Positions 1,646 through 50,848 are shown, counted from the first letter of the stretch. The stretch is 64,000 nucleotides of DNA from Iphione sp. A-MEVVRFRX5 (GCA_976226885.1 OZ320321.1:55862001-55926000), one strand, 5' to 3'. The notes: generated by a model from the sequence alone, not told the origin. Numbers and translations: made by a program.

Positions 1646-2718
1646 AAAAGGAATAACAACGATAGACGGCTTAGAATAGATCTTTTTCCTTAGATTCTGA
1701 AGCACATCTATTTACTGAATCATATTACAACACACGAAGCACTGCATATTTAAGTGGAAAGTGGACTATACAAACTCAGTTCACGGGAAAGACACTTCAC
1801 ACTAGAGGCAACTGAAGCCGAGAAGGGAAAGAGGCCGATAGATTTCCGGTATTGATACGACAATCTGATAGCCAATCAATACAAATGCACGTAACCGGAC
1901 CCGCCTGAGGTTGTACCCGGCCCAAGTGCTAAAGGCTGCTGACCCTACAGTGGCTCGACAATGCTCATAAGTAATAAACTCGGCCTAGGGATAAACATCA
2001 AACAACCGAACTACATGTACTACTCGCGTGGGTCGCGGGTTTAGCACGTAGGGCCACATCTACTCAGTCCCTGTTATATATATACATTATGGAAAAGAGT
2101 GCACACATATAGACAAGATTCCTTCTAAAATACACAGTCGGATGAACTAACTCGTATTGGCATTTAAACAAATGCTTTCCAACTCAACGGCATAAAAAAC
2201 TGTCCATCAATGAATATAATTCCGCTATTTTTTCCACTTTCAACTGTAACCGCATTAGCAGAGGCAGCCAATGTAGGATATCCTTAATAAAATATGCCAT
2301 ACATTCTCCATTAATTTAAGCTGTCTGAGAAAAAATTAAACACCAGGAAGTGCAATTCAGTGTTTATGACATCTGGAAGGAAACACTTGAAACAAATCAT
2401 TCGGTGCCAGATGGATAGACAGACATGTCAGATTTTCTTACGTTACAGATTAAAAAAAAAAAACAGTGGAAACATGGAATGTTCATCGGAGCCAATCTAG
2501 GTCATGATGCTGCTCGAGTGTAGAGCTCCCATATATCGGAGGGGAACGGGCAAATAGGTAAGTAGTCACTCACGAATCCCAAGATGTTCCTACCTGACAG
2601 GTGAATAATACGGGTCGATGGATATCGATCTAGTCAAGTAGGATTGGGTTGGCGCAGGTGGGATCAGTCGATGTGGTCTCATATTTTCTACCCGCTTTCA
2701 GCATGGCTCAACACTTAC

Positions 2719-2792
2719 TTCATCAGCAAACCACCACACGATATCGTCCCCTCAAGGACACCTATTTCTGTCAAGAACCCATGGAAACTCAC
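2719..2792 (-). other. Candidate recursive-splicing ratchet point with 74-nt cryptic RS-exon (RP1)
   Basis: The minus strand reads ...cattca ttttgttctttgtttgttctcttta CAG|GTGAGTTT (junction 2793/2792; 21 of 25 pyrimidines before the CAG). The 74-nt segment ends ...GATGAA|GTAAGT (donor hexamer 2718-2713). The 3' splice site is directly abutted by a consensus 5' splice site. Confidence 0.7.
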
Positions 2793-5236
2793 CTGTAAAG
2801 AGAACAAACAAAGAACAAAATGAATGTTGTGAGCAGATAGTTCGTTTCATGATAGACATGTGTACACACGTATAACCGTGTAATTGGTGTGTTTTATCAG
2901 ATGTTTCAAAAGAGCTCTAAGTATCCGCCTTGTTTCTAGCAGGGATACATTTTAGTCCTCTAAACAACATCCCGGTACATTGGAAGTTCATGCCGTTGAA
3001 AGTGTTTCTTTTTTAATATAGTTACAAACTTGTGCCGTCTACATGAAGGCAGCCACACTATAGAAAATGCTTCCGTTATAAACATACACTCTCAGACATC
3101 TTAATAATACATCACCTCCTATAAATACCATTAAAATGTTATAAGCCTGTAAAATATATTTCTTTAGATACATGATATACGTGCTCACTTTAATAAATAT
3201 CTTAAAATGTGTAAAATATGTGACAAAAAGTGTTAAAATGAACACTTGTTTCTGAGTGAAGTTGCAGGATGTCTTTATCCTTTTATGCACTTCGTGTATC
3301 TCCATTATACAGAATCAACTACATGTAGTTAATAAACAATGTAACTTTTTGCATCTAGAATGAAAAAGGTTCTAATCGGCGGTCTATAAATGACTCAGCA
3401 GTTTGCATCAGGAAACGGAGAAGGTGCAAAGGGCTTTATCTGGAGTCCCTCAAGGACATATCCCCTCCATCATTCGATTCACATATAACCAAATATCTGT
3501 GCACACTAGTCTGCAATTAAAACGCGCAAACATATAACCGTGTCAATATGGCGTCTGGTCTAAGAGCTTGTGTGGAAAGACAAAGGACAAGTATGGGAGA
3601 AACTCCCTTGTAGAAAGGCTTTCAGTGTGCATGATTAATTTAGTAAAAATATCCACACAAAATGCCAAATGCAATATACATGTACATAGAAGGTATGAAG
3701 TATTAATGTATGAAGCTGACGAGTTGGAATGTTACAAGATTCTCGAGCACTATTGGTCATGCAAAAAGACCTCTCACACCTGCGCATTGCTATGCAAATC
3801 GGTCTCATGGCCACAGCTATAAGGTCTTGCTGGATATCTACATGTAGTTTGTTCGGGTTTTAAAGGTACAGACATCAATGCAACCCACTAGTCTAAGAGA
3901 GGTTTTTAAAAGGCCGGGTCGATAGGTTTGCACCTGGCTTCCTTTCAGTCTATTCTTGTCCACAGTGGAGCCAGGCAACGACTGCATGTGAAATAAAGAT
4001 GTAAAACGACAAGGGCCTTGTATATACACGCTTTCAAATACACATGAATGTACATATGCATGATCATCGATGGGTGGAAAGGCGCCATCTCGGTTTAGCA
4101 GATAAGGCCACAGGTACTTTTTGTCATTATGCTTTGTTTATAAGCAGAGCATGCCTCTATTTGCCACCATTAATTTCTCTTTTAAAATATAAATTTTGGA
4201 GATGCAGGGTAGTTTTTGAAATTCAACCACACCTAAATACCTAGTGCTTGTCTTTGAACTATCTACTTCTCCGAATCAAATGAATCCAAGCACCAATAGG
4301 GCTAGATTATAAATAATTGCTCATTAGGAAGGCTTCCATGCCGGATAAACTTCAAATGCTATAGAAACAAAGCCCTAAGATCTCCCCCAGCCTGACAGTC
4401 TGGCTGTAAGTAGTATTTGAAAAGAGCAGCTTAGTGCTGGATGGGAACATGTCTCTTAAGAGCAGATTAGTTTTTATACAACGTCTCAGGGTAGACATGT
4501 TGATGTGCTCTTCCTCCTGGGAAATTTACCGATGCGAACACTGCAGATATCTTATAGGAATGAAGTATGGCCTTTATCTGTAGGCATTTTTAGTGTCCAT
4601 TTTCTTATGAGTGTCGGGTAATGTAAAAAGGAGCAAATCCTACACACTTTGTGATGTTCACAATCCTCGATAGGAAGGCCGCCGAGAATTGGATTAAGAC
4701 AAATGGCCCCGGGAGATGTTAATATATGAGCTTCCAGCATTCGGCGTGCGATCCCATTTTGGATGTAAAAATCATTATTCATAATATTACCGTCGACACA
4801 CGTTAGTTTTTTTTCCTGAGGAAGAAGAGAAAAAACACCTTGAATTAACTGCCGAACCATGTACACATCAAAACGAATCAGCGATTTCACTATGCTTTGG
4901 ACGAAATGGCAGTGAGAGTGCCATGGCACATATTTCAAGATAACTCCCCACAGGGACCATCCTTCCGAGATGCATACTTCCACTGAGCAGATGTACGATT
5001 AGGAAAAGAAAATGAAACAGGAATCAGTCGGAAAATCATAATGGATGGATTACAATATTTTCCCCATATACATACGTATGAGGCCAATGTTCCATCGTGA
5101 CGGATTACCCTTTCTAGGCCTCTGCTTTGTTGGGGGGGGGGGGCTGGGGATACCGGGCGACTCTCTTCTTCAGGAAACGTCTTACGTGTGTGGTGGTAGA
5201 AGATATGAAGTACGTCCTGCTTTCCTATACTCTGCC

Positions 5237-5326
5237 TTCCTTCATATCTTTTATCTTTTCGTTCTTTTCCTCTTTGTTTGTTTCCTTCTTTCTGTATTTC
5301 TTTCTTTCTTTCTTTCTGTCTCTCCC
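5237..5326 (+). repeat. Pyrimidine-rich (TTTC)n/(CT) low-complexity tract
   Basis: tttctttctttctttctttctgtctctccc with flanking T/C-rich sequence. Confidence 0.8.
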
Positions 5327-8300
5327 AAAAGCTTGTGTAGAATCTACAGCTAAGAGCTGTTGACAGCCAGGTGGCACTAAGATACTGTGTATAAAGGTTT
5401 GACCCTATGTCCCTTGATCCCCGCTACCCACAGGCTGCTTGCTATACATGGTGTGCATAAAGAAATTAGACAGGTATAACCTACAGGCATTGTAGCGTAC
5501 TCCGGCCCGGGGGAGCCATCTTCCATAAGTAGTAGTTGAGGACATGGCATACAGAAGGCCCAGTTACCTAGCAACAAGAGCAACATTTACCAGCGAGGGG
5601 CATTCAGATAGTGGGAAGCTAGGTTAGTGTAAGGGTTCAGGCTTTGCTCGATCTGTGTTAACCAGCAGGTGATTGGAATACCACCGGCATAAACGAGGAG
5701 GTTCAGGGTTGGGATCTGACCAGTGTACCAGGTCATGGGGAACTAAAACATTCACACTATATGTAATATGTTGTGCTTAATCTTACACAACAGAACACTC
5801 TTTGTACCGTTCGTGCAATACAGGCACGTCCGCCTGTTTATTAGGTTTTCAAAAGCACTATGCCCATGTAAGCTAGCCATGTAAGCCACAAATTGAATTC
5901 TATATAGGGAGAAACCATGTGCTGCACAGAAGAGTGCTCAGTAATATTTGTAGATGTTAATTGTGAAAATTGTATACCGCTGAACACAACAGAGTACAAA
6001 ATATTCGATTTGGCCAATGTAAACAAATAAGCCCATCAGAGAAGATGGTACCGACTAAATGTTAAACCACCCTTTGACAGCAGTCATCCCAGAAGGTGTT
6101 GAAATATAATCAATAGCGATTAGCTTTTATGCATACCATTTATGGGAGAGGAAGACTCGATCCCACTTGAAGTAAGGCGATGAAAATCAACAGCCTCGCC
6201 TTCCCCATAGACCAATGGTTTAGGATCCCGTGAGACCTAGAGTTGGAAATGTGGATGACCTTTTTGCATGCTCATATCAAAGCATCAGATTCTTGTGCTG
6301 CTATATTTGAAGTAGTAAGCAAAGATGCTCTCTTCCCCAAAGCCTTCAGAGAAGGAAACGAGGGACATTGCTCGAAGGACACTCACCACTAATGGCAATG
6401 AACGATGCATCGGAATAGCACAACATGTCAAGTGTGGGTTCAATTCGATTCAAAAGAATGTAGCTTTGATATTTTGTCATCATTGGACAATTTTTGAAGA
6501 TTGGAAATGGAGCTAACCCGACTACACTTATTGAAGTGTAGTTTAGGCGGTGATGGAATGGGATGAAGATTTTTACATCGCCAAAATTGAAAAAAAAACA
6601 AGAGCGTTGCGAAACTTCATATCACCGGGCCAAATATCCTTGTCATCATGACAATCCGCAGGTGCAAATGCATGGTGCTTCCAGGCATGTAGCTGGCTTT
6701 GTCGTGTAAAGTACGCAGGTCTGCCAAGAAATACCTCGGTACTCTTTTGGTCACTTTCGAAAGGGTAGAAAATTACTTGTGGAATGGCTTCAGCATTGAC
6801 AATGTCATCTACATATCTTACCACCAAGATGGGGGGCTCCTTTGTTCCATCTGATGCAGAACCTCACCGCCCACAGGCCGATATCTCTTGATATTAAACC
6901 ACACTCAATGGATGAAAGAGTCACTATGATAAGCAACACACAGAGCATCCTGTGCAGAACAAAGACTGTTCATTAAAGAATCTTGAGCAGTAAAAATATA
7001 TGCACGTTGTAGGCAAGACCAAAACAGATCAGAAGCAACCATCACATACCTTGAGACCCAGAACCCCAAAGGCATTCGTACTGTGTAAATATACGTACGT
7101 TAACATGATAATGGATCCGCTTTTCGTCACGAACTGCCAGTCTTGGTTCTCTACGATCGCTGGTGCACCTGCCAGATGCCGTGGTAGAATATTGTTCTGC
7201 CGTTCAGATGGCCCTCGGAGGCGTAACAAAAGAAGCCTTTGTGATGGGATTCATAACTTGGACATGCGCAATCCTCTAGGGCAAAATACTATTCATAACA
7301 AAACTTTCCCTTATTGTTGCTCGTCTAGCTTTACCAAAGTCCGTTCTAGACTGATCACCGTGATCTATAAGCCTTGATCGTGATGGGCTATGCCCATAAG
7401 TGCCAGACGTGGGGTGAATATAAGCACGCGCTGAACCCTTGGGTACGGGGCCACTATTAGCTTCACATAGGGGCTCCCAATAGCAGTTGCTCATTCTTAT
7501 CTCTGCCCAGATACTCTATTCATGGCAGACCAACAATTTGAATCAGGGAAATTGCCATTTGTCTTCAATTTAGGTCCAATTCAATTCTCGGTTCATGAAA
7601 TTGTCAATATGCATTATGCAATATGCATTAATTATACATTTATCTGTACACAACCGAAAAAGACGTCTGATACTAAATTCAGACCCAGTTGACATCAAAA
7701 TTCAAAAGATATTGTGTTAAAGATCAGTAGTAACTGTAAGGTATTAGGTAAACAAGGAATGCATACTGAAAAACAGTAGAGGGAACCTTAAAGGTTAAAT
7801 ACTTCAGGCTCCTTGTGAAATTCCAAAAGGAATCACAAATGTCGGACCACGATCCAGTGAGCATGTTTAAGCGTTTGCCTCAGTGTTTTTTTCAATGCAA
7901 ATCGTGGTCGTTATATTTTCTCAGCGCGCATGATAAGGATGGATGTCCAAATAATTCTGACCTCCTCTGACCTCTTAATTAAGGTATAATCTGCATAGAC
8001 ATACTTGATTTATACTGCCATTCTGACAGCACCCGGCATGACTCATGTGCAGCTATGGCAACCCGATAACAAGAATCCGGGCCCTGCGGCTGCATTTGAG
8101 GGGGTTTCAAATTGACCAGTTCCATGCACCCTGCACTTCATGCAGGTTGCACTACACTGGTAGATTTAACACTGTGTATGGAATAGAGGGGGTCTCATAT
8201 AAGCCCCTGCTTCCAGTCTTAGGGTTAATATCTTTACCATTGGAACTCTGAACTGAACGTTGCCTGGGGTCACAACCGATTATTCCCTTCTTGTGTCAGC

Positions 8301-11039
8301 ACAAATGTTACAGACAACCTGCTGAGGTGAAAGTAACTTACGTAGTCCTGACATGAAGAGAGGTGGGCAGCCAGACGCCTCGCTCCTGTAGTGTTATCCT
8401 ACCCTACACATATGGAGTTATTTCTTACTATCACTAGCCATCAATAAGGTATTGCTCCACGTATGCAGGCGATCAATGTCAACAATGAAATTCAGTCCCA
8501 TTTCATGCGAATGTATTAAATTGAAAGGTAGTTGGAGAGAGGAGGGAAAAGTGGGAAGAGGTAGGGAAGAGAGACTACTGCACCACTTAGAGTAAAGTCA
8601 ATGGCTCCTGTGTCTCCTTTTATATTACATGTAGTAACTCAAGCACCTTTTTTTACAATAAAATGTGCTGATGATTCATACGTGTCTTAACCATGATATA
8701 TTATACGCTAGGACGCTCCTATTCTAGATACCAAACGTTCTGAAAGTATACGGAGTGGAAGTTGTAAAGTATAGCCAAGAATTCGTCTTTACACAGTAAT
8801 AATTACCTAAATATTATTTCTATATCTAGTATTAAAGTTTTCTACAAAATGGATGTTACTTGAATATATGTACATGCAATTTATACATAGACATGAATGA
8901 AATCTACCGGTAAGGCTGCAGATTTTATCAAGATTGTATTTTAGGAGTACGTTAAAGCAGTTGCCAGAATATTTCTGTTCAAAAATGACTTTGTATAATA
9001 TAAATAGATGTACATATATGCCAAATAAGGTGTATATTTGGATATATAATACTGCACATAGGAGCCGTACAGAGACGGTAATGCCCAAGGAGCGTTTGCC
9101 AAGGGTAACATTATGCAAATCAGATAATTAGTAACAAAAAACTAATTAGTGGCAAAAGTTTCCTACGCCGCCCCCATTATAAGTCTACTCGTACACGGAA
9201 AGCTGTGAACGTGACCGGCAGGCTGAAATGTGAAAAAATACTACAGGCTGACGTCACTGGCGCCTGCGACGGCAACCCAATAAAACCTATTTTAATTCCA
9301 TTGACCTTTTTAAAGCATCAAAGCCTTGCAATGATGTTTCTGCCGATGAGACAATACAGTAGAGAGGGGCATGTTGGTAAGCCATGTCTGATTTGTTATT
9401 TTTTTTGTAGCTATGTGTAATGATAATCAACATTAATATAATTTTACGTGTAATATGTTTAGTCATTATGTATTCAATTTTACCTGAAAATGGGACGGGG
9501 CTCATACTGTAAATGAAAAGTGCTTACAGGCGCGATGAGACTCTGAAATGAAACAGTTATTTTGTCAAAGTCAAGCTCACGGTTATGTGGCTTCTTTACA
9601 TGCAAGGCTGTGGGTTTTCTTTGGAAGTGATTGTACAATGCCCCCTAAAGTCTGCAGGATGGGAAACGTTATCAGAATATTTTAATAAAAAAAACGCCAT
9701 TGTTCTTTGGGGCTTACAGTGCTCTTTCTTCTGTTTCCTGCACAAATAGTTCCAAATTGTAGGTTTGTACACTTCTCAAGAACGCCAATTCTTTTCAATG
9801 CGTTCAGGATTTTTTTTATAACCAATAGCTTGAAAAACCTACAATATATTCTACCAGACTTTAACCATAGAATGCTGCTCTGAGGACCTCCTGCCACTTA
9901 TTAGTCGTAGTGCTGTTGGGAATTTGAAAAAAAACACTATGTTCCCGTGTGTAACGTATGTTAGGGCCATGTTCCCCTGTCACACTCATGAAATGGCCGT
10001 GTCATATAGTGACAGCCATAGAGACGGGTAATACAGCCGTGTACACGCCAGACGTGGTCAGTTCACCTGTAGAACTGAGGGCTCTACGGCCCGGCTGCTT
10101 ATTATCGATTTATGTGCAAATAAAAACCGAGGCTGTTCGTTTCACGTTTCATCTACTGTTCACGCAAATGTGAACAAGCACCTGGCAGAGGGTCCTTCAT
10201 TATTTAATTAGTTATCCTTTTTTTCCCCTCTGGCCACCAATTAAAATATTTTGATGAAACCAAAACATGTCAAATGAAGCGTTCCTTTTGACGAAAAGAA
10301 ACAGGGCAGTAGCTTGAGCCGACTACTTGAGCCTGACAGAGCGTCATATAAAGATGTGCACTACGTCACTAAAAGGAGCATAGATTGTCAAGCCTCTGGT
10401 CAAACGGCAACTGCCTTGAGGTAATAACCTGTCATACACAGATGGGGAGACCCATAAAAAGGGTGTCAGCACATTAATCTCAGGCCAATTGAAAATGGGT
10501 GAAGTCGATGGAGTTAAGTGGCCACTCGTAATCTTTCAGCGACGAGCTGCTCGGGTGGGGGATCGGGAAAGAGTCTATTTGTCGTTCCAGCAGCCTGTAA
10601 TCTTTGCACTAGATGACCTTGATCAGGTTGCGGTGCGGTCACGTTATAGGCCGCTTCAATCATCATAAACATTGGTATTGAGAGAAGTGCGTTCCCTACC
10701 AAGAAAACAATTAATGGTAGATTGACATAAGGAATAAAAAAAATATAAGGAAACCGCGGTGATGGAGAAATACCCACGAGATATTTTGGTAGTTCGAGGT
10801 AAAACTCAGCAGGACTGTACTGATCAGGCACTGTCAGAAGATGACATCTAAGAACAACAAGAGTTTAAAAGTCAGCGTAAGATGCACGGCAGAAAAAAAC
10901 AGCATAGATGTTTTATAGCTGCCGGAATAAGAGATGGCGACTTCGATGAAAATTCACAGTTTGTTCCTCAATAATTTCATTACGGGGCCTTCATCCCTTG
11001 GCGTTTGCTTGTGCGTGGAATCTGGATGAAGACTTAGTC

Positions 11040-11345
11040 AATGCCCCCTCCCTCCGCTGCTTGGTGATCACGTGATTCCCGCGTGGAAACGCGCGTCCCT
11101 GTCTTTCTGTACGACCAGATGCCTATCTGCCCGCCGCCTCCTCCGTGTATGCACGTAACGTTCAAAGTTGACGTCTCATCCATAACTTATGACGTCCGTA
11201 CGCCGGGTCACGTACTATTTCCTTAACCAAGGCGTGGAAGTGCGATTCTCAGAGATGCCCGCGGGGGGCTGCGAGGCGGGCGGCAACACTTGACCACATT
11301 GGAACAACAAGAGACGTGGGCAGATTCAAAGCGGCTTTTGAATCC
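11040..11345. promoter_or_regulatory. CpG-rich putative enhancer/promoter with clustered ACGT-core motifs
   Basis: Palindromic E-box ATCACGTGAT (11067-11076), two TGACGTC CRE-like sites (11169, 11190), GTCACGT (11207) and further ACGT cores at 11153, 11158 and 11314. Confidence 0.45.
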
Positions 11346-14300
11346 ACTTTTTATGCAAAACTGGCTTAAAGAAATCAGACACAGAGCTTAGTTATATGGT
11401 CCTATTTCAATTAAACAAACCGGCTGGCCTGTTGTTGCTGTTGTTGATTGAAAAAATCGCACCTAAAATGCTGTTTGTGAGTGCTTTGATGAAGTAACTC
11501 CCTACAGCACCTTTTACCTCGCAGTACCTTAATTCCCCCCTTTCGCTAGATCCTTGTTGTTCCTCAGCAAGCCTTCCCCTAAGGCGTGGTCCTCGTTTCT
11601 TGTGCATATATACTTTACCCTTCGAGGCGGAAGATCTAATTAAATCAGACTACTGCCAACTGAATTTGCCGCGTTAGCCAGCCAACCCAGCATGATCTGC
11701 GCGACGCCCCCAAACGCCATTACTATCACAATACAATCACGTCCAAACAAGAGATACCGATCATTTAATTAAATCGCACATGAGCCCAGGGAAAGTGATA
11801 TTAAAACCGTGACTTCCTCGGCTGCATCCTATCTTTGGTGCGGTAACAAATCTTGGCTTTTTCAGGGCGCCAGAGTGAGGCAGTGGAATTTTCATAGTGT
11901 GCACCCAGCTGATGCTGCATCAAACACATGCTAGCACACTATCAGATAACATGCTATATAGTAACCTGTAGTAAAATAATTGAGATAAATTCTAAGCACC
12001 TGTCTAGTATTTTTCACATGTATCAAGTGGCAAAACGTATCCTTTCAGTGAAAAAAACCACGTCCTTCTATTTCATCATCTCTTCATGTATTATAAGTGG
12101 GCATTGTAAATTACTGGTAAAATTTTACACATCGATTCCTTACTACAATTGTAGATTTGACGTGAAATACATGTATGTATAATTTGTCGCGAATGCGCAT
12201 ACAGACATCCCTAATTCTTGCTAGTAATATTTATAGTAAATATCTGTTGAAGTTACATTTTATACTTAAGTAACATGCATATAAACGTTTAACATGTTCG
12301 CCTGCCGTCCTTTTCCCCCCAAGATCATTACATGGCCCTAAAGCTATTGCCTAAAGATGGGGTCGGTTTCTTCACATGCCGACCTAGTGCACAGCGACCA
12401 CTTACCGCGCGCCAGGTGGCGCAAATAGCGGCCATTGCGTCGCACATTACGAGCTAATGAGACCCCTGGATAAATGGTCGCCCGTCGGTTACCTGCCTCG
12501 TCCCTGGTGGGATGCACCCACCGTGGGTAACAAGCGGTGTCTGTGTGCGAGCCACAGGAATTCTGTAGTTCGTGTTATCTCCGGCCTGTGGCGCTAGTGA
12601 TACGGTCACGTTACCAAGATATCATATGTATTCGTCTCACTTAGGGGGCCGTCCCTTCCCGTGCTGGCTCTGATAAATTTGCGCGACGTGACTGTCATCT
12701 ACACGCTTCCAGAAGGTGTAATCGGTTTATATTCAACAGTTCGTCGCCCCTATTCACAACACTCCTCCGCCCTGCCCCCCCACCCCCCACCCCTCATTCC
12801 ACCTACCCACCCACCCCTCTCCTACAAGCCCCCTCATCCCGCCCTCTTACAAGCCAGCATTGGGGTGAAGTGATGGAGGCAGGAAGGTATACGATTAGCT
12901 CGAATGGGGGAGGAATAGCTGATGAAGGCAGCCATGTGCATCTGTGTAGTGCGCCACAGCCTTTCAGTCCACTGGTGTCTGCTAACAAATTCATGACGGG
13001 CTGGATGTCATTTTTCTCACTGTGGCTCACTCGAGAGTCCCTGCCCCCGCTGGGTCGAGCGGCCAGGGCACATCAAGTGAAGCCTTTCAACTGCCCGCTG
13101 CCCCCCCCCCTCGCAGTCCCGTTGCTGCTGGTTTTGGTCGCTGAAAAATTAGATAGCCGACCTTGACAATTATCGTTATTCTGATCGGCCTAATGCCGGA
13201 GGAATCAATACCGGGTCAGGGTCTAAGCAATTGTGGCATGCATGGGAATCTGAAGCTGGTGGCCGCAGGGGGCTGTGACCCGAACGGAATACAGACTAAT
13301 TCCCGCTACCGCTCGGTGCTCAGGGTGGAGGGCAGAGAGAACTGGAGAGCGCCGTCCTCGTGTTGGCTAATTCCAGGCTCTATCTAGTCCCTCAGTCAGT
13401 GGTGGAATTATAACGTAGCGTAGCGTGCTGAAGTGGCACGGTTGACTCGTCACGCGGTGTTAGGATCATTTTGATTAGAAGCCTTACAGAAAAGCAGCAA
13501 AATAAGTCGACAGAGGCCCACACGGGGAAGTGATAAGGACAAACATTCTACTTTGCTGGTTTCTGTTGTGAATGAGCAAGAGTAACTGCATCTCAACACG
13601 GCTTCAAACCTATCACGAAGTTGTTATGGCCAAGGGGAATTTATTTAAATGATAAAAAACCTACTCTTTTCCTGCAATACGTTGTATTCGGCAGACATTT
13701 TAAATGTCAGTACCTCTAGTTTCATTCACGTAACTTATGCTGTGACAATTCAATTGGCGCTCCTTGCATGATGACTTTAACCAGTTTCTGCCTTCTTGAC
13801 AATCAATACTATCAAATTAGGCATTTAGAGAAAGCCACATGGGCTTGCATGCATCACTTTCAATATCCAATTTAAACAAAGCCTTAGCTAAATTTAAAGT
13901 GACACTCGTTGTCAACCTTTAAGTCCTCTACAAACGTTGAAATCATGAGATTAAAAATCGAAATCCTCTTTTGATGAGTTCCTACACAGGCTCCCTTTTT
14001 AGCATAGGAGAGGTGACAGTGCGGCAGCAGGGGAGGGGGAGAATGAGTCTGAAAGCGCCAAGTCGCAATTGGCTGGCTTTTTGGTGGGGACTACCTGACG
14101 CTATTACCTAGCACCTCGACTGTCAGGTGCGAGATTACCGCTGGAAAGGTCAGCCCCGACCTGCCGATTCTAATTACACCACGCTCGACGGCTGCGGGCG
14201 TCGGTGTCAGGCCCGGAAAAGGCCGGCTGTCAGGAGCAGCTCGGGGAAGGACTCGGAGCAACTCGCAGAAACGCACGGCCGCCAAGAACATTTCGTCTGC

Positions 14301-28082: not shown

Positions 28083-31000
28083 TGTAGACGACATCTGCAT
28101 GCTCAGAGTGTCTGTGGGTTGTGCCGGTTGATATGTGCGTATGTGTGAGTGTACATATGTATGTATGTACATGTGCGGGGGGGGGGGAGACTGGGCAGGG
28201 CTTGTAGATGTGTCGTTGGCTATCAGACTGGAATACCCAATGGCAAATTTGTCTTTCATGGCACCACGAACACTGGGAGGGCGCAACACGCCAGACGCAT
28301 GCAATTGCAGACGCCATGCAAGCAAGCGAGGCCGCGCCTGACAATTTGAATGCTCGTATTTATTCAAATCATTACATCATTGGATCGACCAGCAGACAAT
28401 CGGAACGAAATTTGATAAAACCTGATTAAATGTTCACTGGGGATTAACCTATTGAATTACTGGACCAAACTAATCACCCGAAAAATAACTAGGAAAAAAT
28501 TTAAGTAACTAGGTCCATTTTTGTGATGATAAATAACAAACTCGTGCTATTATTGCTCGGCGCTACCGGCAAAGCGAAGATAACCCTTGAAAACGGGAGG
28601 CTTACTGTCAGTGACAGCTCCAGCGCCGGCAGCAGGATTATAAAGCAAACACGAAGGGACAAGGTGAATTACAAAGGGAGTGAGCTACCAGGAAAATAGA
28701 GCTGCACCGCTCGGGTCGTAGGGAAAAAAAAGCCATCGGGTGCCGGGTGCTCATCCTTTTGGTCAGTAGAGGTCAGTACGCGCTCCGGCCGTCGACTGAG
28801 CGTGGATTCCGGATCCATTTCACCGGGTGGGGCCGAGATGGAAGGACAGGGTGCGCTAAGGGCTTGGCGGGGCCGGTAGGCCAGTCCACTGGCACGACAG
28901 AGCTGCTGACCCCTCCCTGACCCGCACCATTATCGGCCCAGCGCCGGCCGAAGCGGCCCCTGTCCGGCCAGTCGCCCATCTTCACGCTGTCCTGATTAAG
29001 ACTACGGCCTTTCCATTGACCTTCACACCTCTTGAATAATTCGACGCACACACGCACATCTAGACACAACCGAAGGGCAAAAGGACTGCGGGTGGAGGTG
29101 GATGGGGGCCCTGACTACTTAGACTTGGACCGAACCCGATGACCAGAGTGGATGACCCGAAGGCTGCATGGCTACCCCCACAGACACTGTTGCTGCACGC
29201 TAGCCTAGGAACTTATTATGTTTGCCTGACAAACTGGAGAGATAACTCGAACAGGATCAGCTTTTGATAACGCTCCTCATCCCTGCAGCCGAAGGTCGTT
29301 CGCCTGTATACCACTATCTTTTCCCATTGCATTTTGCCTGTTACTCTCCAAAAGCCCCAGATGGCCTTCTTTTAGTCCATCCAGCACTTCATCTTTCTCA
29401 ACGTTCTGAACTTCGACACATGACCTTCTATACAGACGAATTTATTCTCTACCATGAAAACTTGAATGTTCTTCCCTCCAAGTTTAACAGAGCTATCCTC
29501 ATTTTGTGGATTTTCAAAAATTCAAATGTCTGACCTAACATTCCCATTGGTGCCAGGATTACCTATGTCAACAAGTCATCTGTTTCAATAGTACATTTTT
29601 TATACACACATAATATACATGTAAGCTGAATGTAGTCAGTGATCTCTACCCTCTGACGCCGCTAGGCAACATTTATCACACCCAGCGCTGGGCGAGGGGT
29701 AGCGGAAATTGGGGGCAAATCCTAGGGGTCAGTCGTGACCATTTTATCAGCTGACATTGAGATGGCGTTTGCGGCTATCCTTTGGGGTTCATTCAGGCAA
29801 TGACAGCTTTAGTCCCTATTATAGAATGATGTATTCTTGGAATGTTCCTTAGAAACTTTAGGGACTATGAGTACGATTTCCATATGCACCAACGAAGTCC
29901 AGATATCCCAATAGTAATGCAAACCCAGTATTTAATGTGTTCTAGGCTGGTTCGTGATGGAAAACTCTTTACCTGTGTCTCCTGAAGTTTAGACTGGTTT
30001 GATTACATATATACGTAATGGACTTAGCATTGAGATTCTATACTTATGCCATGAGAAATACGATCAAGAACTTCGATGGATGCATCAATGAATTATTCAT
30101 GAAGGATTCGCAGTAAACATTAACATGAACATTGCCATTGCGCTGTAACAGACTTTCTATGTAGCACATAATGGTGTCGACAGATCCGCGCAGTAAAATA
30201 GTTTTTCCTGTAAAACAAACGTGAACATTGGTCTTTTCGTGACATTAATCTGATGATCTTCTCCCGTAAAGAAGACGAACCCTATTACATTTCGTGTGCA
30301 GAAGGCCATAATAAGAGGCTTCTTCTTGTATTGATTCCACGAGCAGGAAACCTACAGGACAAGCCATTGTTGTAGGAAATAAGCTTTGGTAAGACCCTGC
30401 CTCTGTTTATCTGTTCGCCGGAACATCGATTTCCCTGTTATATGCAGACTTGTGAGTATTGATTTGTCAATTAGCACCACGAAGCCCTGATCATTTTCGC
30501 ACTCGGGGCTCTTAGAAATTACACCTTACCGAGTGGGTGGACCGGAACGAATCGCGCAACAATCTAAGCCTCGAAATAGGTTTGTAGAATGTGCTGTTCA
30601 TGTTACTTGTCAGCATCCTTGTGTTTTTTTCCATATAAACTTGCGTCACTGAATTCCGTGATAATCGTAGGCAGTGTTATGTTTGCAAACTGTGCAACTC
30701 TGGAAGAAAATGCCGTGGTATGTGTTGCATCAAAATATTTCTCTCCGATAATGTTCAACCCGATGAGTACCAATCATGAAGGAGAGAGTTCACCTCTTTC
30801 TAACTGATCGTGGCATTGCTTGTCTATGATAGCACTCGGTTATTTTATATTATATTCCCGGTATACAGCGGCGGTATATACATCCTACCTTGCCCTTGTT
30901 CCATTCATCATTGACCTATCCCTCGTGTACCATTACAGAAACCACCAGCCAATACCAGAAGCACCAACTCGCAGCATAACCTGGACATAAGCCACCCCCG

Positions 31001-32800
31001 CCCTGCCCGACTAGTCTACACTCACACCACCAGTAGACCGGATTAACCCTAAATGTAGCCATGCTCAGAAGGTCCAAACGATTTTCGATAAGCTAGCATG
31101 CCCTGGGTCCAATTATGAACCCATGGCTCGAGCTGGGAGAACGACACTTCGGAGGTCTATAGTTTGAACCCTGAATAAGTCGCCGACAAATACACCCCCT
31201 CAGTCTCCACTCTATCGATTCCTGCAGGCCGGTGGTAGTTGCAGAGTGCGGGTGGTGGCGGTGGCATCGGTAAACTAGGCGCCTGTAGAGGAAGCCACAT
31301 TGATATGGCTTCTCTGCCAGCCTCCACGAGTGGCTTCTCAAGGGCGAGCAGACTTTCGCTTGTGTTGTAGCCGTTGTTAAGCCTGCACTCAGCAAACACA
31401 CACCAGAGGCGTAGGGAGAGACAAAGCTAGCTTGTTAGGCTCACATTCGTAATTAATAAAGCGAAAACGTCCCTCTTGTGAGGGACTGTGGGCCACTGAA
31501 GGGAACGCTTAATGAAGAGAGCGGCTCAGCGGCAGTGAAAGGCGAGTGAGCAGCTCTCACTCTTACAGGCTCATTTCAAGCCATCTGGTGGAGTTTAGGA
31601 AAACACCCAAGCATTCCCATGCGCCCGTAACAAGGAACTGGTGGGACAACTCCACCTTCACAATGTATAGTCACTTTCCTTTGCTACTTGCTTTGATAAG
31701 ATACATTTTAGCGCATGTTACTCAGCCATCGGCCCCCGTTGTATGTTCTATATATAACTTTCTCAATAAGCTCTACATGCGCGGTGATACAACCGCGCCG
31801 TCAGTGTCGATCGATGAGTGTTTGTGGGGTTAGGGTTGAAGTGGGGTGAGCCGAGATGGATATGGGTGATTATCTTGAAGGCAGTGGAGCCGGACAACCT
31901 TATAGAACAAGGAACGTATACACAGTCTTTCGGCCAAGGTGCCTCCTGCAATCTCCAGGAGGTGCCCGAGCAATTAGAAATAAACCGCATCCATCCTGAA
32001 ACTGACAAGGGTGAAGGATCTCCTTTGATGGTATGAAAATTCCATAAAGAATTAATAAAGTGATTGCAGGCAATAACACGAAGATTTACAAATGTTTTCA
32101 TCAATGGAGGACGCTCACTACGCCATACGCGTAATTGCACATTGGAGCACCTCACTCATTCCGCCCACCTCTCCATCGAGTGAGAGTGAACTTTGTCGAC
32201 AGCTGTGATTTCTTTCGCTTTTTCTTTGCCAGCATAGGCCTCGCTTTTAAAAATGGAGCCAAACGGCGAAGGAAAACATGTAAAAAGGGATGCGCTTGTT
32301 CTAAATATGGCCGACAGGGCTGCGGCGTGCGGTAGAGGCTCCCGCCGTGTTGCAGCTGTTTTCATGTGCGGCCGCCGCCGCTGCTGCTACTGGCGATAGA
32401 CCGAAAGGACAAACTGTCGTAGAGGCAAGGTGACTAATTATGCCGTGTGCTAATCCTGAGGAGACGAGACGATGACAAGAGCATATCGTTTCCGTGAGGG
32501 TTCTCATGCTATTTCCCTCTGATGCCATTTTCCCTACTCATAATGAAGGATTCTCATATGCATATACATATGTATATGTATACGAGGAACCTTCATTATG
32601 GGTCTATATATGAGTATATTATATATACGAGTTTCTATCCACTTCTTGTTGATTTATGTTTCTCACTCTTTGGGGGAGTACTGAGCTAAGTTACCGGCCA
32701 ATGTTTTCCGCTGGGATAGCAGTGTGCGTGCAGTAGCGCTGGAAGATCTCTCACGGCTCCATTGGCGATTGGCTTATGGTGGGGCCGACACGTGATGGTG

Positions 32801-32813
32801 CCACCAGATGGCG
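32801..32813 (+). promoter_or_regulatory. CTCF-like motif CCACCAGATGGCG
   Basis: Matches 13 positions of the CTCF core consensus CCASYAGRKGGCRS. Confidence 0.45.
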
Positions 32814-34655
32814 ACTTAGGTGCCTGTGACAGGTCATCTGGTAGGTAGTCTATCTCAAGGTGGGGACAGGGTAGAGAATCTGCCCAACCACTTCGGACCT
32901 TCTCATCATTGGTTCCTCTTCTCCCGGGTCGTGTCCGGAAAGTGAACGGCACTGTCTATGATGAAACAACCGCTCAGACACTACTCTTAAAATTCGATTC
33001 ACCGCCAAAGGAAATTTGGTAGGAATACATATGTTATAAATATTCCGGATTGCTTCTATTCAGAATAAGCATAGATTATGCACGATTGGGACATTCATTT
33101 ATTGTGCTGCCAAAACTGACCAAGTATTACCTACTTTGTCAGGCGATAATAAAATGGATACAATATCTATAAAGTAAAGTTTACTCACCATAGAGACGAA
33201 CATATTACATAGGAAAATTTAAAGTGCTTCTATAGGATCTTCAGGGAGTAGGATAAGTAACCATTGGAATGGGTTCTATACAATTCATGTCAGAGGCAAC
33301 TCACACTTTCCCTATCGATTACCTCACGCCTTTAAACGCCTATAACTTCTGAAGTTCAAGGAAATCTTGTTGGGCCTTTTTCCATATAAACATTATTGGT
33401 TTAAAGCATCACACAATAGCAATGATTAGAACAGCGCTGTGCTGCTTTGAAGGCTGGCGTAATACAAATCAGCTCCAGAGCTGGATGGCAATGGCACTGA
33501 GTTGATTTTGGTGCGAGCTGGCAATGGTGAGGTTTGGTCATGGCGCGAATCATCGTACAGCATATTCTCGAATGAATGGGAAAAAAGACTAAACATAACC
33601 TGTCTCTGGGGAGTTGGTCCCTTCCCCAGATACCTTCCAGAGCGACCTCGCAATGCCTAAATAAGGCTACTTGACCAGGGACCCCTCCCTTACTTGGTCT
33701 ATTGATTGTTCTAATACATATGTCATCTACGCTGGAGATTAAGACTAATCCACAGCCCATGGGCAATGATCCTGGCCAGCTTGTCCCTGCAGTCGCTCTC
33801 CTCATCAGTCTGCCTTGCGTCAGCCTCGAGCTACATCTGTGCCAAAACACCAGCGACTTAATGCGCCCGGTCGATACCGTGGAATTACCCTAATAAGAAA
33901 AGCTTACAGTGAGGCTTCCTTTAATTACCTCCAATGCTGTCTGGGAAAATAAAGGCCCATAGAAATAGGGATTCTAGGCCAGCAGGGGTGATGCCAAGTC
34001 CGAAAGCCAACCCAGCGGAGACGGTCAATCCGCGGGACTGGCCCGGCAGGCGAGCTCCACATTTTCTTCAATGCCCGCACCACAGTCAGTGTTCAATTAA
34101 CCCACACACTACACCTTCTTTCTCTCATAACGACATTATAAAGCCAGGATCTGCGCCGCCATAGGAGGCCTTACGCCGAGTTTGCTGGGCGTGGCAATGA
34201 AGGCAAACTAAAACAATCAGCCACCAAAGCTTGCCCGGCCCGCCGCGGCTAATTCGAGGAATTCCTCAAAGAGCGCGTCGACGTCATTGCCCAAATCGGT
34301 TTGACATGGGCTGGATGTAAGAAAAGATGTGATCAAGGATGGATGGGAGGAAAGTAAAGTGAGTCCGCGTGCCGCCTCCCGGAACGTTATTAAGGAGACT
34401 GAAAGGGTCCTCGAATCCAGAACTAATGCCACACAAATGGGCAAGAGCTGCAGCATGATTCACTCGGTAAGATTATCAACAATCGGGTGGGTGAAATGGG
34501 TCTGAAGGAGGGATGTTCCCATTCTTCACCTGCACTGAAGCACCAGGTCTCCCTTCAATATCCCTCTGTGTGTGGCACTGTGGATATTAGATCAGTGAAG
34601 AAAAGAAGGTGGGAAGTTCACATCAAAGAAGGATTGGAAAAAAAGGCCAACTTAC

Positions 34656-34701
34656 TCAAGTCATGTCTCTCGCCATTAGGGCATCTCGTCTGCAAACTTA
34701 C
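34656..34701 (-). other. Candidate recursive-splicing ratchet point with 46-nt cryptic RS-exon (RP2)
   Basis: The minus strand reads ...gtattc attcccatgttttattcttctcattg CAG|GTAAGTTT (junction 34702/34701; 20 of 26 pyrimidines). The 46-nt segment ends ...ACTTGA|GTAAGT (donor hexamer 34655-34650). Confidence 0.7.
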
Positions 34702-36558
34702 CTGCAATGAGAAGAATAAAACATGGGAATGAATACGGTTATTTCCTGAAGTGTAATTGAGTAATGACAGGAACAAACACAGCTTCTTTTAACGCCTAAT
34801 GCATTGCTGTCAAGGAAAATAATGGAAGAGGCCGACGGAAAGAAATTTTAAATTTCCAAAATATCTACCGCTTTCTGTCTTTCTGAAGTGAGAATAGGAG
34901 CGAATTACTAGTCGGCGTCTAATTGTTAAAAATTCAATTAGCTCTTGGCCGTGGGTGAAAGCTGGGTTGTGATCCCATATTTTCGGATGTCATTACGCCT
35001 GCTCATTGGCTGCCCTTCGAAACGGGCTCATTAGCGGCACGAAAAGCCGCTTACAGAGAAGAGAGCGGAGTACTTCGCACGGCCTTGTCGCCGACACCTA
35101 GGTCGCGAATGACTAAATACTTTTTGGACAAGGTCACAGCAAGTAACAGAATTGAGTAGAGCGAGAGCTACGAGCACACTGTGTAATATTAGCACATCTG
35201 TATGACGACTGCATTTACATACGTATGTTCCTACATTGTAGAGACATAGAAGATTGCTAAGACGGCGAATAGTGTACTGTATTTATTCCTGAATATAAAA
35301 TCCCTATACAACAGCATGGTAAGATGATATAGAATATTATTTGATACAAATGATCCATAGTTATCAATCTCCTATAGGAATTCTATATGTTCTTAGTTAA
35401 TTATGAATATTTTCAGCCATAGGTATTGCTATCGAACCACCTATGAAATTACATGACAAATTAGCTGACCCGCGTAGTAATTAAAGACTTGAAAGGTTAC
35501 CACCTGCTCTGCGCGATGCGCATATATTCATTCATAATTACAGGCGTTATGACGAATTAAGTCAGGAATTTGCAAAATGTATTCCCGGATAATACATGCT
35601 GTAAGGCTTTGGACTGATCTTCTGTAAATGACGCCAACCCTGGTATATCTGAAGGCTTTAAGGCTGTGGTCCCATAAATCCTAAGTGGGAAATGCATCAT
35701 AATCCCTAGGTTAGGGCTTGGTCCGTCATACACAATCAATTCCCAGTCTGGCTTTAACACCGTTCATCCCCCCCCCCACCCTTCCCCCACTGGAAGGGGT
35801 GTCACGGTAAAAGATGGAGACTATCTTTCGTAGCGGATCCCACACGGGCTTCTCCTCGGAAAGCAGGGGAGAAGCCACCCGTCTGGGACTCGACAAGAAG
35901 AGGTCTTGTCAATCTCTTAAGGTAATTGCACATGTGTGAATCTGCGAGGGCTTTTCTGGCTTCACTGATGGGTGAGCAGGAGCTACGAGGCACACGAGTA
36001 GGCACGGAAGGTGGGATGAGCACAGGTCTACAGAGAAGCAGCCATTAGACAATAAGGGGACTTTCCTGGTGCGACGTCTAGAAGGACTAATTGGTATTAA
36101 GGCATGTCAATAGAAGACCAAATGAAGGCTGCATGAGAACGCTTCCCTCGCCAAATCGTGGATAAGGCGTTTCGCTGGGTTACAACGCGAAAACACTTGG
36201 CCAAATATCTGCTCTTGTCAGTGTGTTAATGTTCAAATTACGTTTTTAGAGGTAATTTAGATAGATGCTCACTTTAAAATGTAATTTCGTCAGGAGTACC
36301 CTATCTGGTGCATTACGTCCACAGCTATGCAATTTTCTAATCGTTATTAATAGCAGATAATATACTCAGGATTCAAACTTAACTTTCTTAAATGTTTAGT
36401 ATCTGGGTCAATCACCTCCGAGTAGATATGGCCCTTTTTTGAAGATTCATCACCAGAATTTTATCATTACCACTTCATAGCTCTTCATGGCTTCCTTCGC
36501 CGGCATAGTCATTTTTCAGTTAGCTTTTGCTGCTTGCTGCTTCCATCATGGCAACTCT

Positions 36559-36663
36559 CTTATCAATCTCTTCAAAGGCCTTCTCTTCTCTTGTCAATCT
36601 CTTCAAATTTCTGCTCTTCTCTTATCAGTATTCTCAAACTGTTTCCTTATCAACCTCCTCAAA
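36559..36663 (-). repeat. Degenerate tandem repeat, four 18-bp cores (TTTGARRANRYTGAYAAG) spaced 25/31/31 bp
   Basis: Cores lie at 36646-36663, 36621-36638, 36590-36607 and 36559-36576. They translate as FEEVDK, FENTDK, FEEIDK and FEEIDK, and successive cores are out of frame with each other. Confidence 0.6.
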
Positions 36664-44279: not shown

Positions 44280-45440
44280 AACACTTGCTTCCGACGTGAG
44301 GCAGGGGGCGCCCTCGGCAGGCCCACTCACCTTGACAATCATTTAAATCGATCCACGGGCTCAGGTAATAAGCCTCTTATGCTGCACCGGTGACGCTGTC
44401 TCCAACGGAAATTATAATCAAGCGGAAGACCTCCGCCCCCACCCCAAAGTGCAAATTGCACGGAGAAAGGGGCAGGGATTGCAGGCACGGTGGAGCTGGG
44501 GTGTGAGCTCGGAAGAGGTAGAGGAGAAGGAGCCCCACGTTGCCCAACGGTATACACGGACGGGGAAACATATTTATTCGTCTAACACTGCCCGAGATGC
44601 TTGTCGAGACAACAGAGGCTATAGTCTGCCGTGAAGGCGATGGAGCCAGGGCGGGGAGCATAACCCAAGACCTTCGTATAGTGGCCGAACGTATCTTAAC
44701 TCAGCGACGAAAACGGCACTGATATCAAGCACAACGCTCCTCCCAGATCCAAAATTCCGCCGCCATTTCCTAAATCAGTGTTGCCCCCGTTGTTGTGGAG
44801 GTGTTGTTCCGGCGCTGAATGGCTTGTTGATGCCCCCCAGTGCCTCCCGCGCGGTCGTCGATTTGTGAATTCAAGTCGCGCCGCTTGGTGGCCTTTTGAA
44901 TACATTAGTGGTCGAGGGATCGAGGCCTCCCGACATTGCATTATGAGCGTAAACAAAAGACAGCTATCGATCGCACCTCCAGGGGTCGGGAGGGGGGAGG
45001 GGGTGGGTGGGGGGCCACGTGTAGGGGAGGGTGTTTTGGGCGTTGGTGCCGAGATCTGTAGGTATAATTGGGGGGGGGGGAGGGTGAACTGGGCGAGAGT
45101 AACATATTCCAGAACAATGGTGGCCGTGATGGCCAGAAGCAGGTAATGCATGGTCATGTTGACACCGGCGGCTTCCCTCATACATGGCCACGCATTGAAT
45201 GGCGGATCACTCTGTTAAAAAAACACGACGACACTTAGCCCTACCATCCAACACGATCCCCCTTGCATACGGCGCCGCCGCCGCCGCCGCCGCGCGTCTG
45301 TCGCTTAAGGGGTGCTAGCTCTTCTCAAGGGACCGGAGTGTCTCCCTTTGGGCAAACAGACAACTGAGAAAAAAAGGGGAAAGGTGCCGAACAGTATAAA
45401 GGATTGTGAGGGGGTGAGGAAAGTGTCGCCGGGTGACGCG
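44280..45440. promoter_or_regulatory. GC/CpG-rich island with (GCC)n, G-runs and minus-strand splice signals
   Basis: Visibly GC-rich block with (GCC)6-7 at about 45272-45292 and G-run clusters at 44982-45014. It has a minus-strand donor AAG|GTGAGT at 44331/44330 and an acceptor (tttcccctttttttctcag) at 45364/45363. Confidence 0.4.
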
Positions 45441-47797: not shown

Positions 47798-47836
47798 TCC
47801 TCTCTCTCTTTTGTGCTCTCTCTCTCTCTCTCTTTA

Positions 47837-47887
<51 letters not shown>

Positions 47888-47895
47888 CCCTCTCT
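47798..47895 (+). repeat. Interrupted (CT)n microsatellite
   Basis: Long (TC)n runs with short interruptions, inside a ~150-bp pyrimidine tract. Confidence 0.9.

Positions 47896-50778: not shown

Positions 50779-50848
<70 letters not shown>

What the first reader, a model, noticed from the sequence alone, without database searches (positions are those of the whole stretch)
2713..34734. Candidate recursive-splicing system: two near-identical ratchet-point/RS-exon modules subdividing a giant minus-strand intron in a non-insect, non-vertebrate-like genome
Seen in sequence: two minus-strand sites 31.9 kb apart share one architecture. Each has ATTCAT (a yUnAy branch-like motif) with its A at exactly -29, an AG-free pyrimidine tract, CAG immediately followed by GTRAGTTT, and a perfect GTAAGT 74 or 46 nt downstream. 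Neither exon length is a multiple of 3. My manual scan found no plus-strand site combining a tract with AG|GTRAGT, and no recognisable coding exon in the window. Established knowledge: AG|GT zero-length-exon ratchet points followed by short cryptic exons define recursive splicing in Drosophila long introns and in long introns of vertebrate (often neuronal) genes. Inference: a host gene with an intron over 32 kb, probably longer, is transcribed on the minus strand and spliced stepwise. I know of no description of recursive splicing in cephalochordates, though I cannot search for one. Rough hand estimate at about 42% GC: a perfect GTAAGT within 80 nt occurs by chance about 2-3% of the time per site.
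Basis: partly seen in the sequence, partly recalled or inferred. Interest (0 to 1): 0.85.

Follow-up and report, generated by a model that had tools for sequence, protein, structure and literature searches.

The report
Two likely recursive splice sites
Two spots 32 kb apart on the same strand of a gene-free stretch each carry an intron-end signal fused to an intron-start signal, far more perfectly than chance allows, so a very long intron is probably removed here in steps, a mechanism known in flies and vertebrates but not yet shown in this animal group.

Summary
On the minus strand, positions 2792 and 34701 each have, in this order:
- ATTCAT with its A at -29;
- an AG-free pyrimidine tract with TT at -6/-5;
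- CAG|GTRAGTTT;
- a perfect GTAAGT 74 or 46 nt downstream.

By a generic splice-site matrix, the two sites are the two best donors and the 4th and 5th best acceptors on that strand. Their combined scores are 26.4 and 25.8 bits, against 16.8 for the next-best AGGT on either strand. A Markov null expects 0.0004 such sites per 64-kb strand. Only 0.9% of AGG sites have GTAAGT 25-80 nt downstream.

The two modules are not homologous copies; they share only the signals. Both short exons are non-coding and out of frame.

The best reading is Drosophila-type ratchet points with cryptic RS-exons in a long minus-strand intron (confidence 0.58).

Use of the sites remains unproven:
- no sequencing run was listed, so no reads could be laid;
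- no related DNA could be fetched;
- the window holds no recognisable coding exon, so the host gene is unknown.

The scan has noted similar candidates elsewhere in this genome, including one in a Dachsous intron that a follow-up called conserved. This is a new member of a known kind, of moderate interest.

The parts
34729..34734 (-). ATTCAT, branch-point-like yUnAy motif of the upstream site (RP2); A at 34730 = -29
   Evidence: function inferred
34702..34728 (-). AG-free pyrimidine tract ending TTGCAG: the 3' splice-site half of RP2 (TT at -6/-5, C at -3)
   Evidence: acceptor score 13.3, 5th best of the strand
34696..34701 (-). GTAAGT, the 5' splice-site half of RP2, starting directly after the AG
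   Evidence: donor score 12.6, best of the strand
34656..34701 (-). 46-nt candidate cryptic RS-exon of RP2; stops in two of three frames
34650..34655 (-). GTAAGT, downstream donor that would define the RP2 RS-exon (context TGA|GTAAGT, score 5.3, weaker than the ratchet donor)
2820..2825 (-). ATTCAT, branch-point-like motif of the downstream site (RP1); A at 2821 = -29; a second yUnAy (CTCAC) has its A at 2830
   Evidence: function inferred
2793..2819 (-). AG-free pyrimidine tract ending TTACAG: the 3' splice-site half of RP1 (TT at -6/-5, C at -3; no AG for more than 120 nt upstream)
   Evidence: acceptor score 14.1, 4th best of the strand
2787..2792 (-). GTGAGT, the 5' splice-site half of RP1
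   Evidence: donor score 12.3, 2nd best of the strand
2719..2792 (-). 74-nt candidate cryptic RS-exon of RP1; stops in two of three frames
2713..2718 (-). GTAAGT, downstream donor that would define the RP1 RS-exon (GAA|GTAAGT, score 8.2, weaker than the ratchet donor)
44325..44330 (-). GTGAGT after CAAG, third-best donor of the strand, at the end of a GC-rich stretch with a (GGC)n run. Speculative 5' splice site of an upstream, possibly first, non-coding exon, 9.6 kb before RP2
   Evidence: inference only

Best explanation
The two sites are intronic recursive splice sites (ratchet points) of the Drosophila type. They lie in a long intron of a gene transcribed on the minus strand.

Proposed mechanism, all of it inferred:
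1. As the polymerase passes each site, the strong 3' splice site and the GTAAGT 46 or 74 nt further on are recognised together as a short exon (exon definition).
2. The upstream exon is spliced to that short exon. This removes the intron segment transcribed so far.
3. The join places the end of the upstream exon directly in front of GTRAGT, which recreates a strong 5' splice site.
4. That recreated site outcompetes the weaker donor at the end of the short exon. The short exon is therefore removed together with the next segment and never reaches the mRNA.

The 31.9 kb between the two sites would be one such segment.

Shown: the motif architecture and its statistical excess on one strand. Not shown: transcription, use of the sites, order of the steps, and the host gene.
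For: 1. Composite signal. Both sites are at once top acceptors (14.1 and 13.3 bits) and the two top donors (12.3 and 12.6 bits) of the minus strand. Their combined scores exceed every other AGGT on both strands and in reversed controls by 6-10 bits. The Markov expectation is 4.4e-4 per 64-kb strand, which puts two on one strand at about 1e-7.

2. Strand specificity. There are two such sites on the minus strand and none on the plus strand. Published background for such sites on complementary strands is about 0.1 per 100 kb, against 0.5-2.2 per 100 kb in large introns of invertebrates (PMC2773006).

3. Downstream donor. Both sites have a perfect GTAAGT at 46 or 74 nt, which occurs at only 0.9% of AGG sites here. 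This matches the short cryptic RS-exon (about 50 nt) required in flies (PMC8605326).

4. Exon properties. The short exons are out of frame and carry stops, and their own donors score lower than the ratchet donors (8.2 and 5.3 against 12.3 and 12.6). These are the properties reported for skipped cryptic RS-exons.

5. Fine detail of the acceptor. TT at -6/-5 is present at both sites. It is found at 99.5% of fly ratchet points and at 44% of fly introns in general (10.1101/006163), and at 7% of all AG in this window.

6. Segment length. The 31.9-kb spacing lies within the 2.6-63.6 kb range of fly recursive segments.

7. Setting. The window is unique, repeat-poor, non-coding DNA with no Pfam, Rfam or tRNA hits, as expected for a giant intron or gene desert. 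There is a mild excess of T-runs on the minus strand: 52 against 29 runs of 6 or more, p = 0.014.
Against: - There is no RNA evidence of any kind: no run was listed.
- Conservation could not be tested.
- No flanking exon or host gene was found, so even minus-strand transcription is an inference.
- Strand skews are weak and mixed. T exceeds A on the minus strand, but G exceeds C on the plus strand.
- RP2 has two fair acceptors 105 and 181 nt upstream, so its GTAAGT could also serve as the donor of an ordinary exon.
- The splice matrices are generic ones written from my own knowledge; they were not trained on this genome.
Confidence: 0.58

Rival explanations
1. The two segments are expressed exons of a minus-strand transcript. 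They could be alternative, 5'-UTR, lncRNA or poison exons that begin with a donor-like sequence. They would be included in at least some mature RNAs, with re-splicing at their 5' ends acting as a switch between inclusion and skipping, as for Ubx mI/mII or vertebrate annotated RS-exons.
For: The exon-like architecture is the same as in the best explanation. Expressed RS-exons exist in flies (fewer than 50) and are common in vertebrates (PMC8605326; PMC6224609). The joined length of 120 nt preserves frame.
Against: Each segment has stops in two of three frames, and the joined sequence has stops in all three. Their own donors are weaker than the regenerated ones, which in flies predicts skipping. 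An exon starting with GTRAGT by chance is expected at roughly 1 in 1000 (my own estimate), so two in a row need selection for re-splicing anyway.
Confidence: 0.2
2. These are chance or non-functional motif matches in DNA that is not transcribed on the minus strand, or is transcribed but never spliced at these positions.
For: No transcript evidence was obtainable. The scan reads very many windows, so rare coincidences will be flagged. Strand skews are weak.
Against: The expectation of 4.4e-4 sites per strand-window makes two on one strand about 1e-7. That is small even against about 250,000 windows. The sites are 6-10 bits above all controls, and independent extras (the downstream GTAAGT, TT at -6/-5, the AG-free zone) are present at both.
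Confidence: 0.12
3. The GTRAGT motifs are ordinary 5' splice sites of exons lying just upstream, for example 34806-34702 or a first exon started near 34.9 kb. The pyrimidine tracts would simply be the 3' ends of those exons.
For: RP2 has acceptors scoring 9.7 and 9.8 at -105 and -181, and the 105-nt candidate has one open frame. A CCAAT-like element lies about 300 nt upstream.
Against: RP1 has no acceptor scoring 6 or more within 600 nt upstream. Only about 0.1% of AGG sites have an acceptor context this strong, yet both sites do. This model leaves the branch-like motif, the AG-free zone and the downstream GTAAGT unexplained.
Confidence: 0.07

Closest known systems
Drosophila intronic ratchet points with cryptic RS-exons (Hatton 1998; Burnette 2005; Duff 2015; Joseph 2018/2021; Pai 2018)
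   Same: - (Y)n-NCAG|GTRAGT core with TT at -6/-5.
- A short downstream exon of about 50-75 nt that is out of frame and stop-rich, with a weaker donor than the ratchet donor.
- A segment length in the tens of kb.
- Location in long non-coding DNA, on one strand only (PMC8605326).
   Different: - The organism is not an insect; notes on other pieces of this genome say annelid-like (not checked here).
- There are no RNA, lariat or conservation data here.
- The host gene is unknown.
- One site uses GTGAGT rather than GTAAGT.
Vertebrate recursive splicing through RS-exons (Sibley 2015) and EJC-repressed annotated RS-exons (Blazquez 2018, PMC6224609)
   Same: An exon-definition step, followed by a regenerated 5' splice site that competes with the exon's own donor. 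Cryptic RS-exons act as poison exons if included.
   Different: In vertebrates most RS-exons are annotated, included exons protected by the EJC, and few are fully suppressed intronic sites. The present exons look non-coding and built to be skipped, which is closer to the fly pattern.
Computationally predicted RP-site enrichment in large introns of non-insect invertebrates (sea urchin; Shepard 2009, PMC2773006)
   Same: Motif-only inference that juxtaposed acceptor/donor sites accumulate on the sense strand of large introns outside insects. The density here (2 per 64 kb) is like that of fly large introns (2.2 per 100 kb).
   Different: That study was genome-wide with annotated introns. Here a single window was examined, without annotation. 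No lophotrochozoan was included in that study.
Zero-length exon / NMD pseudo-exon of rat tropomyosin (Grellscheid and Smith 2006, as cited in PMC2773006)
   Same: A 3' splice site directly followed by a 5' splice site, with an alternative downstream donor giving a stop-containing pseudo-exon.
   Different: That case lies in a short regulatory context and is not thought to subdivide a giant intron. Here the sites are 32 kb apart in long non-coding DNA.

Membership tests
Intronic recursive splice site (ratchet point) with cryptic RS-exon | Strong 3' splice site (pyrimidine tract, YAG) directly abutting a strong 5' splice site (GTRAGT) at a central AG|GT | tested here: met
   Acceptor 14.1 and 13.3 bits, donor 12.3 and 12.6 bits. 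Both sites are outliers by 6-10 bits over all other AGGT and controls.
Intronic recursive splice site (ratchet point) with cryptic RS-exon | Prominent pyrimidine tract with TT at -6/-5 (99.5% of fly ratchet points) | tested here: met
   (both sites TT; background 7% of AG sites). The fly figure is from 10.1101/006163.
Intronic recursive splice site (ratchet point) with cryptic RS-exon | Downstream donor defining a short RS-exon (about 50 nt) needed for exon definition | tested here: met
   GTAAGT at +46 and +74. Only 0.9% of AGG sites have this.
Intronic recursive splice site (ratchet point) with cryptic RS-exon | RS-exon out of frame or stop-containing, with its donor weaker than the regenerated ratchet donor, so that it is skipped | tested here: met
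   Lengths 46 and 74 nt, stops in two of three frames each. Donors 5.3 and 8.2 against 12.6 and 12.3, scored with a generic matrix. The true regenerated site depends on the unknown upstream exon end.
Intronic recursive splice site (ratchet point) with cryptic RS-exon | Lies on the sense strand inside a long intron of an expressed gene | tested here: inconclusive
   No coding exon, Pfam hit or host gene in the window. Strand skews are weak and mixed. Both sites are on one strand and none on the other.
Intronic recursive splice site (ratchet point) with cryptic RS-exon | Junction reads from the upstream exon to the site, saw-tooth nascent coverage, segment lariats | not testable with these tools
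   No sequencing run was listed for either query, so read laying could not be used.
Intronic recursive splice site (ratchet point) with cryptic RS-exon | Core motif conserved in orthologous introns of related species | not testable with these tools
   No protein anchor was available to fetch relatives. Window ORFs are not on record. Exact-pattern scans of metagenome contigs found nothing.
Expressed (annotated) RS-exon, Ubx mI/mII or vertebrate EJC-protected type | Exon is included in mature mRNA and usually preserves coding frame | tested here: not met
   The frame criterion fails: stops in two of three frames each, and in all three when joined. Inclusion in RNA could not be tested.

The most novel reading that the evidence does not exclude
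These are constitutively used, fly-style ratchet points with cryptic RS-exons in a spiralian (annelid-like) animal. Together with the other candidates that the scan noted in this genome, they would show that intronic recursive splicing of giant introns is ancestral to protostomes or bilaterians, and not an insect speciality paralleled in vertebrates. A bolder sub-reading is that they cut an intron of about 85 kb, the first intron of the neighbouring Cys-loop (ACh-gated chloride channel) gene, into three nearly equal parts. That depends on a speculative signal-peptide exon at 58789-58675, and nothing supported it.
Probability: 0.45. Interest if true: 0.55.

Novelty: new member of a known kind. 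Interest (0 to 1): 0.42.

Why it matters
Recursive splicing has been demonstrated with RNA data only in Drosophila and vertebrates, and the two differ. Flies have hundreds of silent intronic ratchet points. Vertebrates mostly have included RS-exons held in check by the exon junction complex.

In the open literature searched here, no paper reports recursive splicing in an annelid, mollusc, other spiralian or amphioxus. The only hint outside insects is motif enrichment in sea urchin.

Sites as clean as these, in a third major animal branch, would indicate that the fly-type mechanism is old. They would also give precise coordinates for a simple RT-PCR or nascent-RNA test. For annotation, they warn that such short exon-like modules should not be called as exons.

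Tried and rejected
- **RNA evidence.** I made two sequencing-run queries (kind rna on 32000-37000, kind any on 33200-36200). None was listed, so read laying was never usable.
- **Homology between the two modules.** Local alignment shows only the 44-nt signal stretch, no better than shuffles. A self-BLAST of the window finds no repeat family. A shared mobile element or duplication is therefore rejected.
- **Coding exons or host gene in the window.**
  - ORF lists showed nothing coding.
  - Pfam on the ten best ORFs gave only a sub-threshold PRIMA1 match.
  - Splice-flanked open exons gave nothing protein-like.
  - The 3-periodicity scan peaked only at triplet repeats at 58.8-59.9 kb.
- **Signal-peptide first exon.** I considered 58789-58675 as a signal-peptide first exon. 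An exhaustive phmmer search found no match, and many equally good ATG-to-donor candidates arise by chance. It is left as speculation.
- **Walking outwards or to relatives.**
  - The look-up of encoding contigs on a window ORF found nothing.
  - An exact look-up of ten ORFs found nothing.
  - Exact-pattern scans of metagenome contigs with each core found no hits.
- **Strand of transcription from composition.**
  - GTAAGT occurs 15 times on the minus strand and 4 on the plus, with about 13 expected.
  - In the first 16 kb, poly(A) signals number 30 on the plus strand and 10 on the minus.
  - T-runs favour the minus strand 52 to 29.
  - These are suggestive of a minus-strand sense, but they depend largely on one A/T skew, and the G/C skew points the other way. 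I did not rely on them.
- **Known RNAs.** Rfam and tRNA scans found none.
Full report
**What is there**

Read on the minus strand, position 2792 is the first base after ...ATTCAT-TTTGTTCTTTGTTTGTTCTCTTTACAG, and the sequence continues GTGAGTTT. Position 34701 is the first base after ...ATTCAT-TCCCATGTTTTATTCTTCTCATTGCAG, and the sequence continues GTAAGTTT.

A script confirmed the details:
- The A of TTCAT lies at -29 at both sites (coordinates 2821 and 34730).
- There is no AG between it and the 3' AG. The nearest upstream AG is more than 120 nt away at 2792 and at -46 at 34701.
- The tracts are 75-85% pyrimidine.
- Both sites have C at -3 and TT at -6/-5.

A perfect GTAAGT follows at +74 (2718) and at +46 (34655). 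The 74- and 46-nt segments each have stops in two of three frames. Joined (120 nt), they have stops in all three.

The window holds only five AGGTRAGT octamers. The two on the plus strand (2558, 18003) have purine-rich upstream sequence. The third on the minus strand (44330) has a poor tract. Only the word 'near-identical' overstates the likeness, and GC is 45% rather than 42%.

**Is it more than chance?**

I scored every AG as an acceptor and every GT as a donor, using generic metazoan matrices written from my own knowledge.

- On the minus strand the two sites are the best and second-best donors (12.6 and 12.3 bits). They are also the fifth- and fourth-best acceptors (13.3 and 14.1 bits).
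- Their combined scores are 25.8 and 26.4 bits. The next-best AGGT on either strand scores 16.8. The best in the two reversed-sequence controls scores 19.5.
- In 2 Mb of third-order Markov sequence modelled on this strand, 0.12% of AGG sites had an acceptor score of 13 or more, and 0.35 donors of 12 or more occurred per 64 kb. That gives 4.4e-4 composite sites per 64-kb strand, and about 1e-7 for two on one strand.
- The real window agrees with this null away from the two sites, so the null is not grossly wrong. The result survives correction for the number of windows scanned.
- Independently, only 19 of 2024 AGG sites (0.9%) have GTAAGT 25-80 nt downstream. TT at -6/-5 occurs at 7% of AG sites.

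The two sites are not copies of one element. Local alignment of +/-400 nt finds only the 44-nt signal stretch, with a score inside the shuffled range. A self-BLAST of the window finds no repeat family at all. So the shared architecture looks like convergent selection for the same signals. It is not shared descent.

**Surroundings**

The window has no ORF longer than 207 codons and nothing that looks coding. There were no Pfam hits among the ten best ORFs apart from one sub-threshold low-complexity match. There were no Rfam families and no tRNAs.

Splice-flanked open segments are few and not protein-like. Three-base periodicity peaks only at triplet repeats around 58.8-59.9 kb. CpG observed/expected is about 0.8 throughout. 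This is long, unique, non-coding DNA, either a giant intron or a gene desert.

Two GC-rich stretches could hold upstream exons of a minus-strand gene:
- One is about 45.3-44.33 kb, with a (GGC)n run. It ends in CAAG|GTGAGT, the third-best donor of the strand, 9.6 kb before the first site.
- The other is 58.9-58.67 kb, where an ATG-started 38-codon open frame with a hydrophobic core ends at ACG|GTAAGA, 24.0 kb before the first site.

The second has no match among 1.84 billion representative proteins. Many equally good ATG-to-donor candidates arise by chance. Both are speculation.

Compositional hints of strand are mixed:
- GTAAGT occurs 15 times on the minus strand and 4 on the plus, with about 13 expected.
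- T-runs of 6 or more number 52 against 29 in favour of the minus strand.
- In the first 16 kb, poly(A)-signal hexamers number 10 on the minus strand against 30 on the plus.
- The G/C skew points the other way.

**What could not be tested**

- No sequencing run was listed for either query, so no reads could be laid. None was listed; that is not to say none exists.
- Orthologous DNA could not be reached. The tools fetch eukaryotic loci only through an exact protein, and the window offers none.
- Exact-pattern scans of metagenome contigs with each core motif found nothing.

Transcription, use of the sites, conservation and the host gene are therefore all open.

**Most likely mechanism**

The architecture matches, point by point, what is described for Drosophila ratchet points.

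- The core is a juxtaposed acceptor and donor, with an especially prominent tract and TT at -6/-5 in 99.5% of cases (10.1101/006163).
- A short cryptic RS-exon of about 50 nt has a downstream donor that is needed for exon definition.
- The ratchet donor is stronger than the RS-exon donor, so the exon is always skipped (PMC8605326).
- Recursive segments measure 2.6-63.6 kb. The 31.9 kb between the two sites here falls within that range.

Published background for such composite sites on complementary strands and in intergenic DNA is about 0.1 per 100 kb. In large introns it is 0.5-2.2 per 100 kb in insects and sea urchin (PMC2773006). Two per 64 kb on one strand and none on the other fits the intronic figure.

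I therefore put 0.58 on silent intronic ratchet points. I put a further 0.20 on the same re-splicing signals attached to exons that are sometimes included.

The remaining rivals are weaker:
- The 'ordinary donor of an upstream exon' model is possible only for 34701, which has fair acceptors at -105 and -181. The site at 2792 has no acceptor scoring 6 or more within 600 nt upstream.
- Pure chance is hard to sustain.

**Comparison with what is known, and novelty**

This is a known kind of element. What would be new is the animal group.

Notes on other pieces of this genome call it annelid-like. I could not check that from this window.

Full-text searches found no paper that reports recursive splicing in an annelid, mollusc, other spiralian or amphioxus; the few papers holding both terms are on unrelated subjects. 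The cross-species comparison of RS-exons in PMC6224609 covered seven species; the text I read names yeast, zebrafish, sea urchin, fly and human, and no lophotrochozoan among them.

The scan has already flagged similar candidates elsewhere in this genome, in Fat and Dachsous introns and others. One follow-up reported three Dachsous sites recurring in a distant relative. I did not test those notes. They agree with the present reading but are not independent evidence.

**Verdict**

I rate it a new member of a known kind, of moderate interest.

Noticed in passing
window 32536-32603: A 65-nt near-perfect AT-rich palindrome, the only self-match in the window. It folds into a long hairpin: plus strand -42.6 kcal/mol, z = -8.1; minus strand -32.2 kcal/mol, z = -5.1. 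There is no Rfam match. It could be a small inverted-repeat element or a hairpin RNA precursor.
   Followed up: partly
window 58800-60500: A GC-rich block (52% over 58-62 kb, 57% at 59-61 kb); CpG observed/expected reaches 1.1-1.2 just beside it, at 57-59 kb. It has (GTC)n/(GCC)n triplet repeats and the strongest 3-base periodicity in the window. All frames are low-complexity. It is possibly a promoter or 5'-UTR region. On the minus strand, a 38-codon ATG-started frame ends at ACG|GTAAGA (58675/58674), but it has no protein match.
   Followed up: partly
window 44330-45400: A GC-rich stretch with a (GGC)n run, ending on the minus strand in CAAG|GTGAGT (third-best donor of the strand), with a second GTAAGT 98 nt further on. 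It looks like a non-coding first exon with alternative donors.
   Followed up: partly
whole window: Strand asymmetry of the hexamer GTAAGT: 15 on the minus strand against 4 on the plus, with about 13 expected from a first-order Markov model. The plus strand is depleted; the minus strand is not enriched.
   Followed up: partly
window 47800-47895, 50801-50900, 55605-55664: Three long CT/GA dinucleotide microsatellites of 30-50 units. Otherwise the 64 kb is strikingly free of internal repeats and of recognisable transposon ORFs.
   Followed up: no
window 2556-2600: Within 200 nt downstream of the 74-nt module, the minus strand carries further donor-like sites: CAG|GTAGGA at 2593 and a GTGAGT about 20 nt further downstream. 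The plus strand carries AGGTAAGT at 2558. This is a local cluster of splice-like signals on both strands.
   Followed up: no
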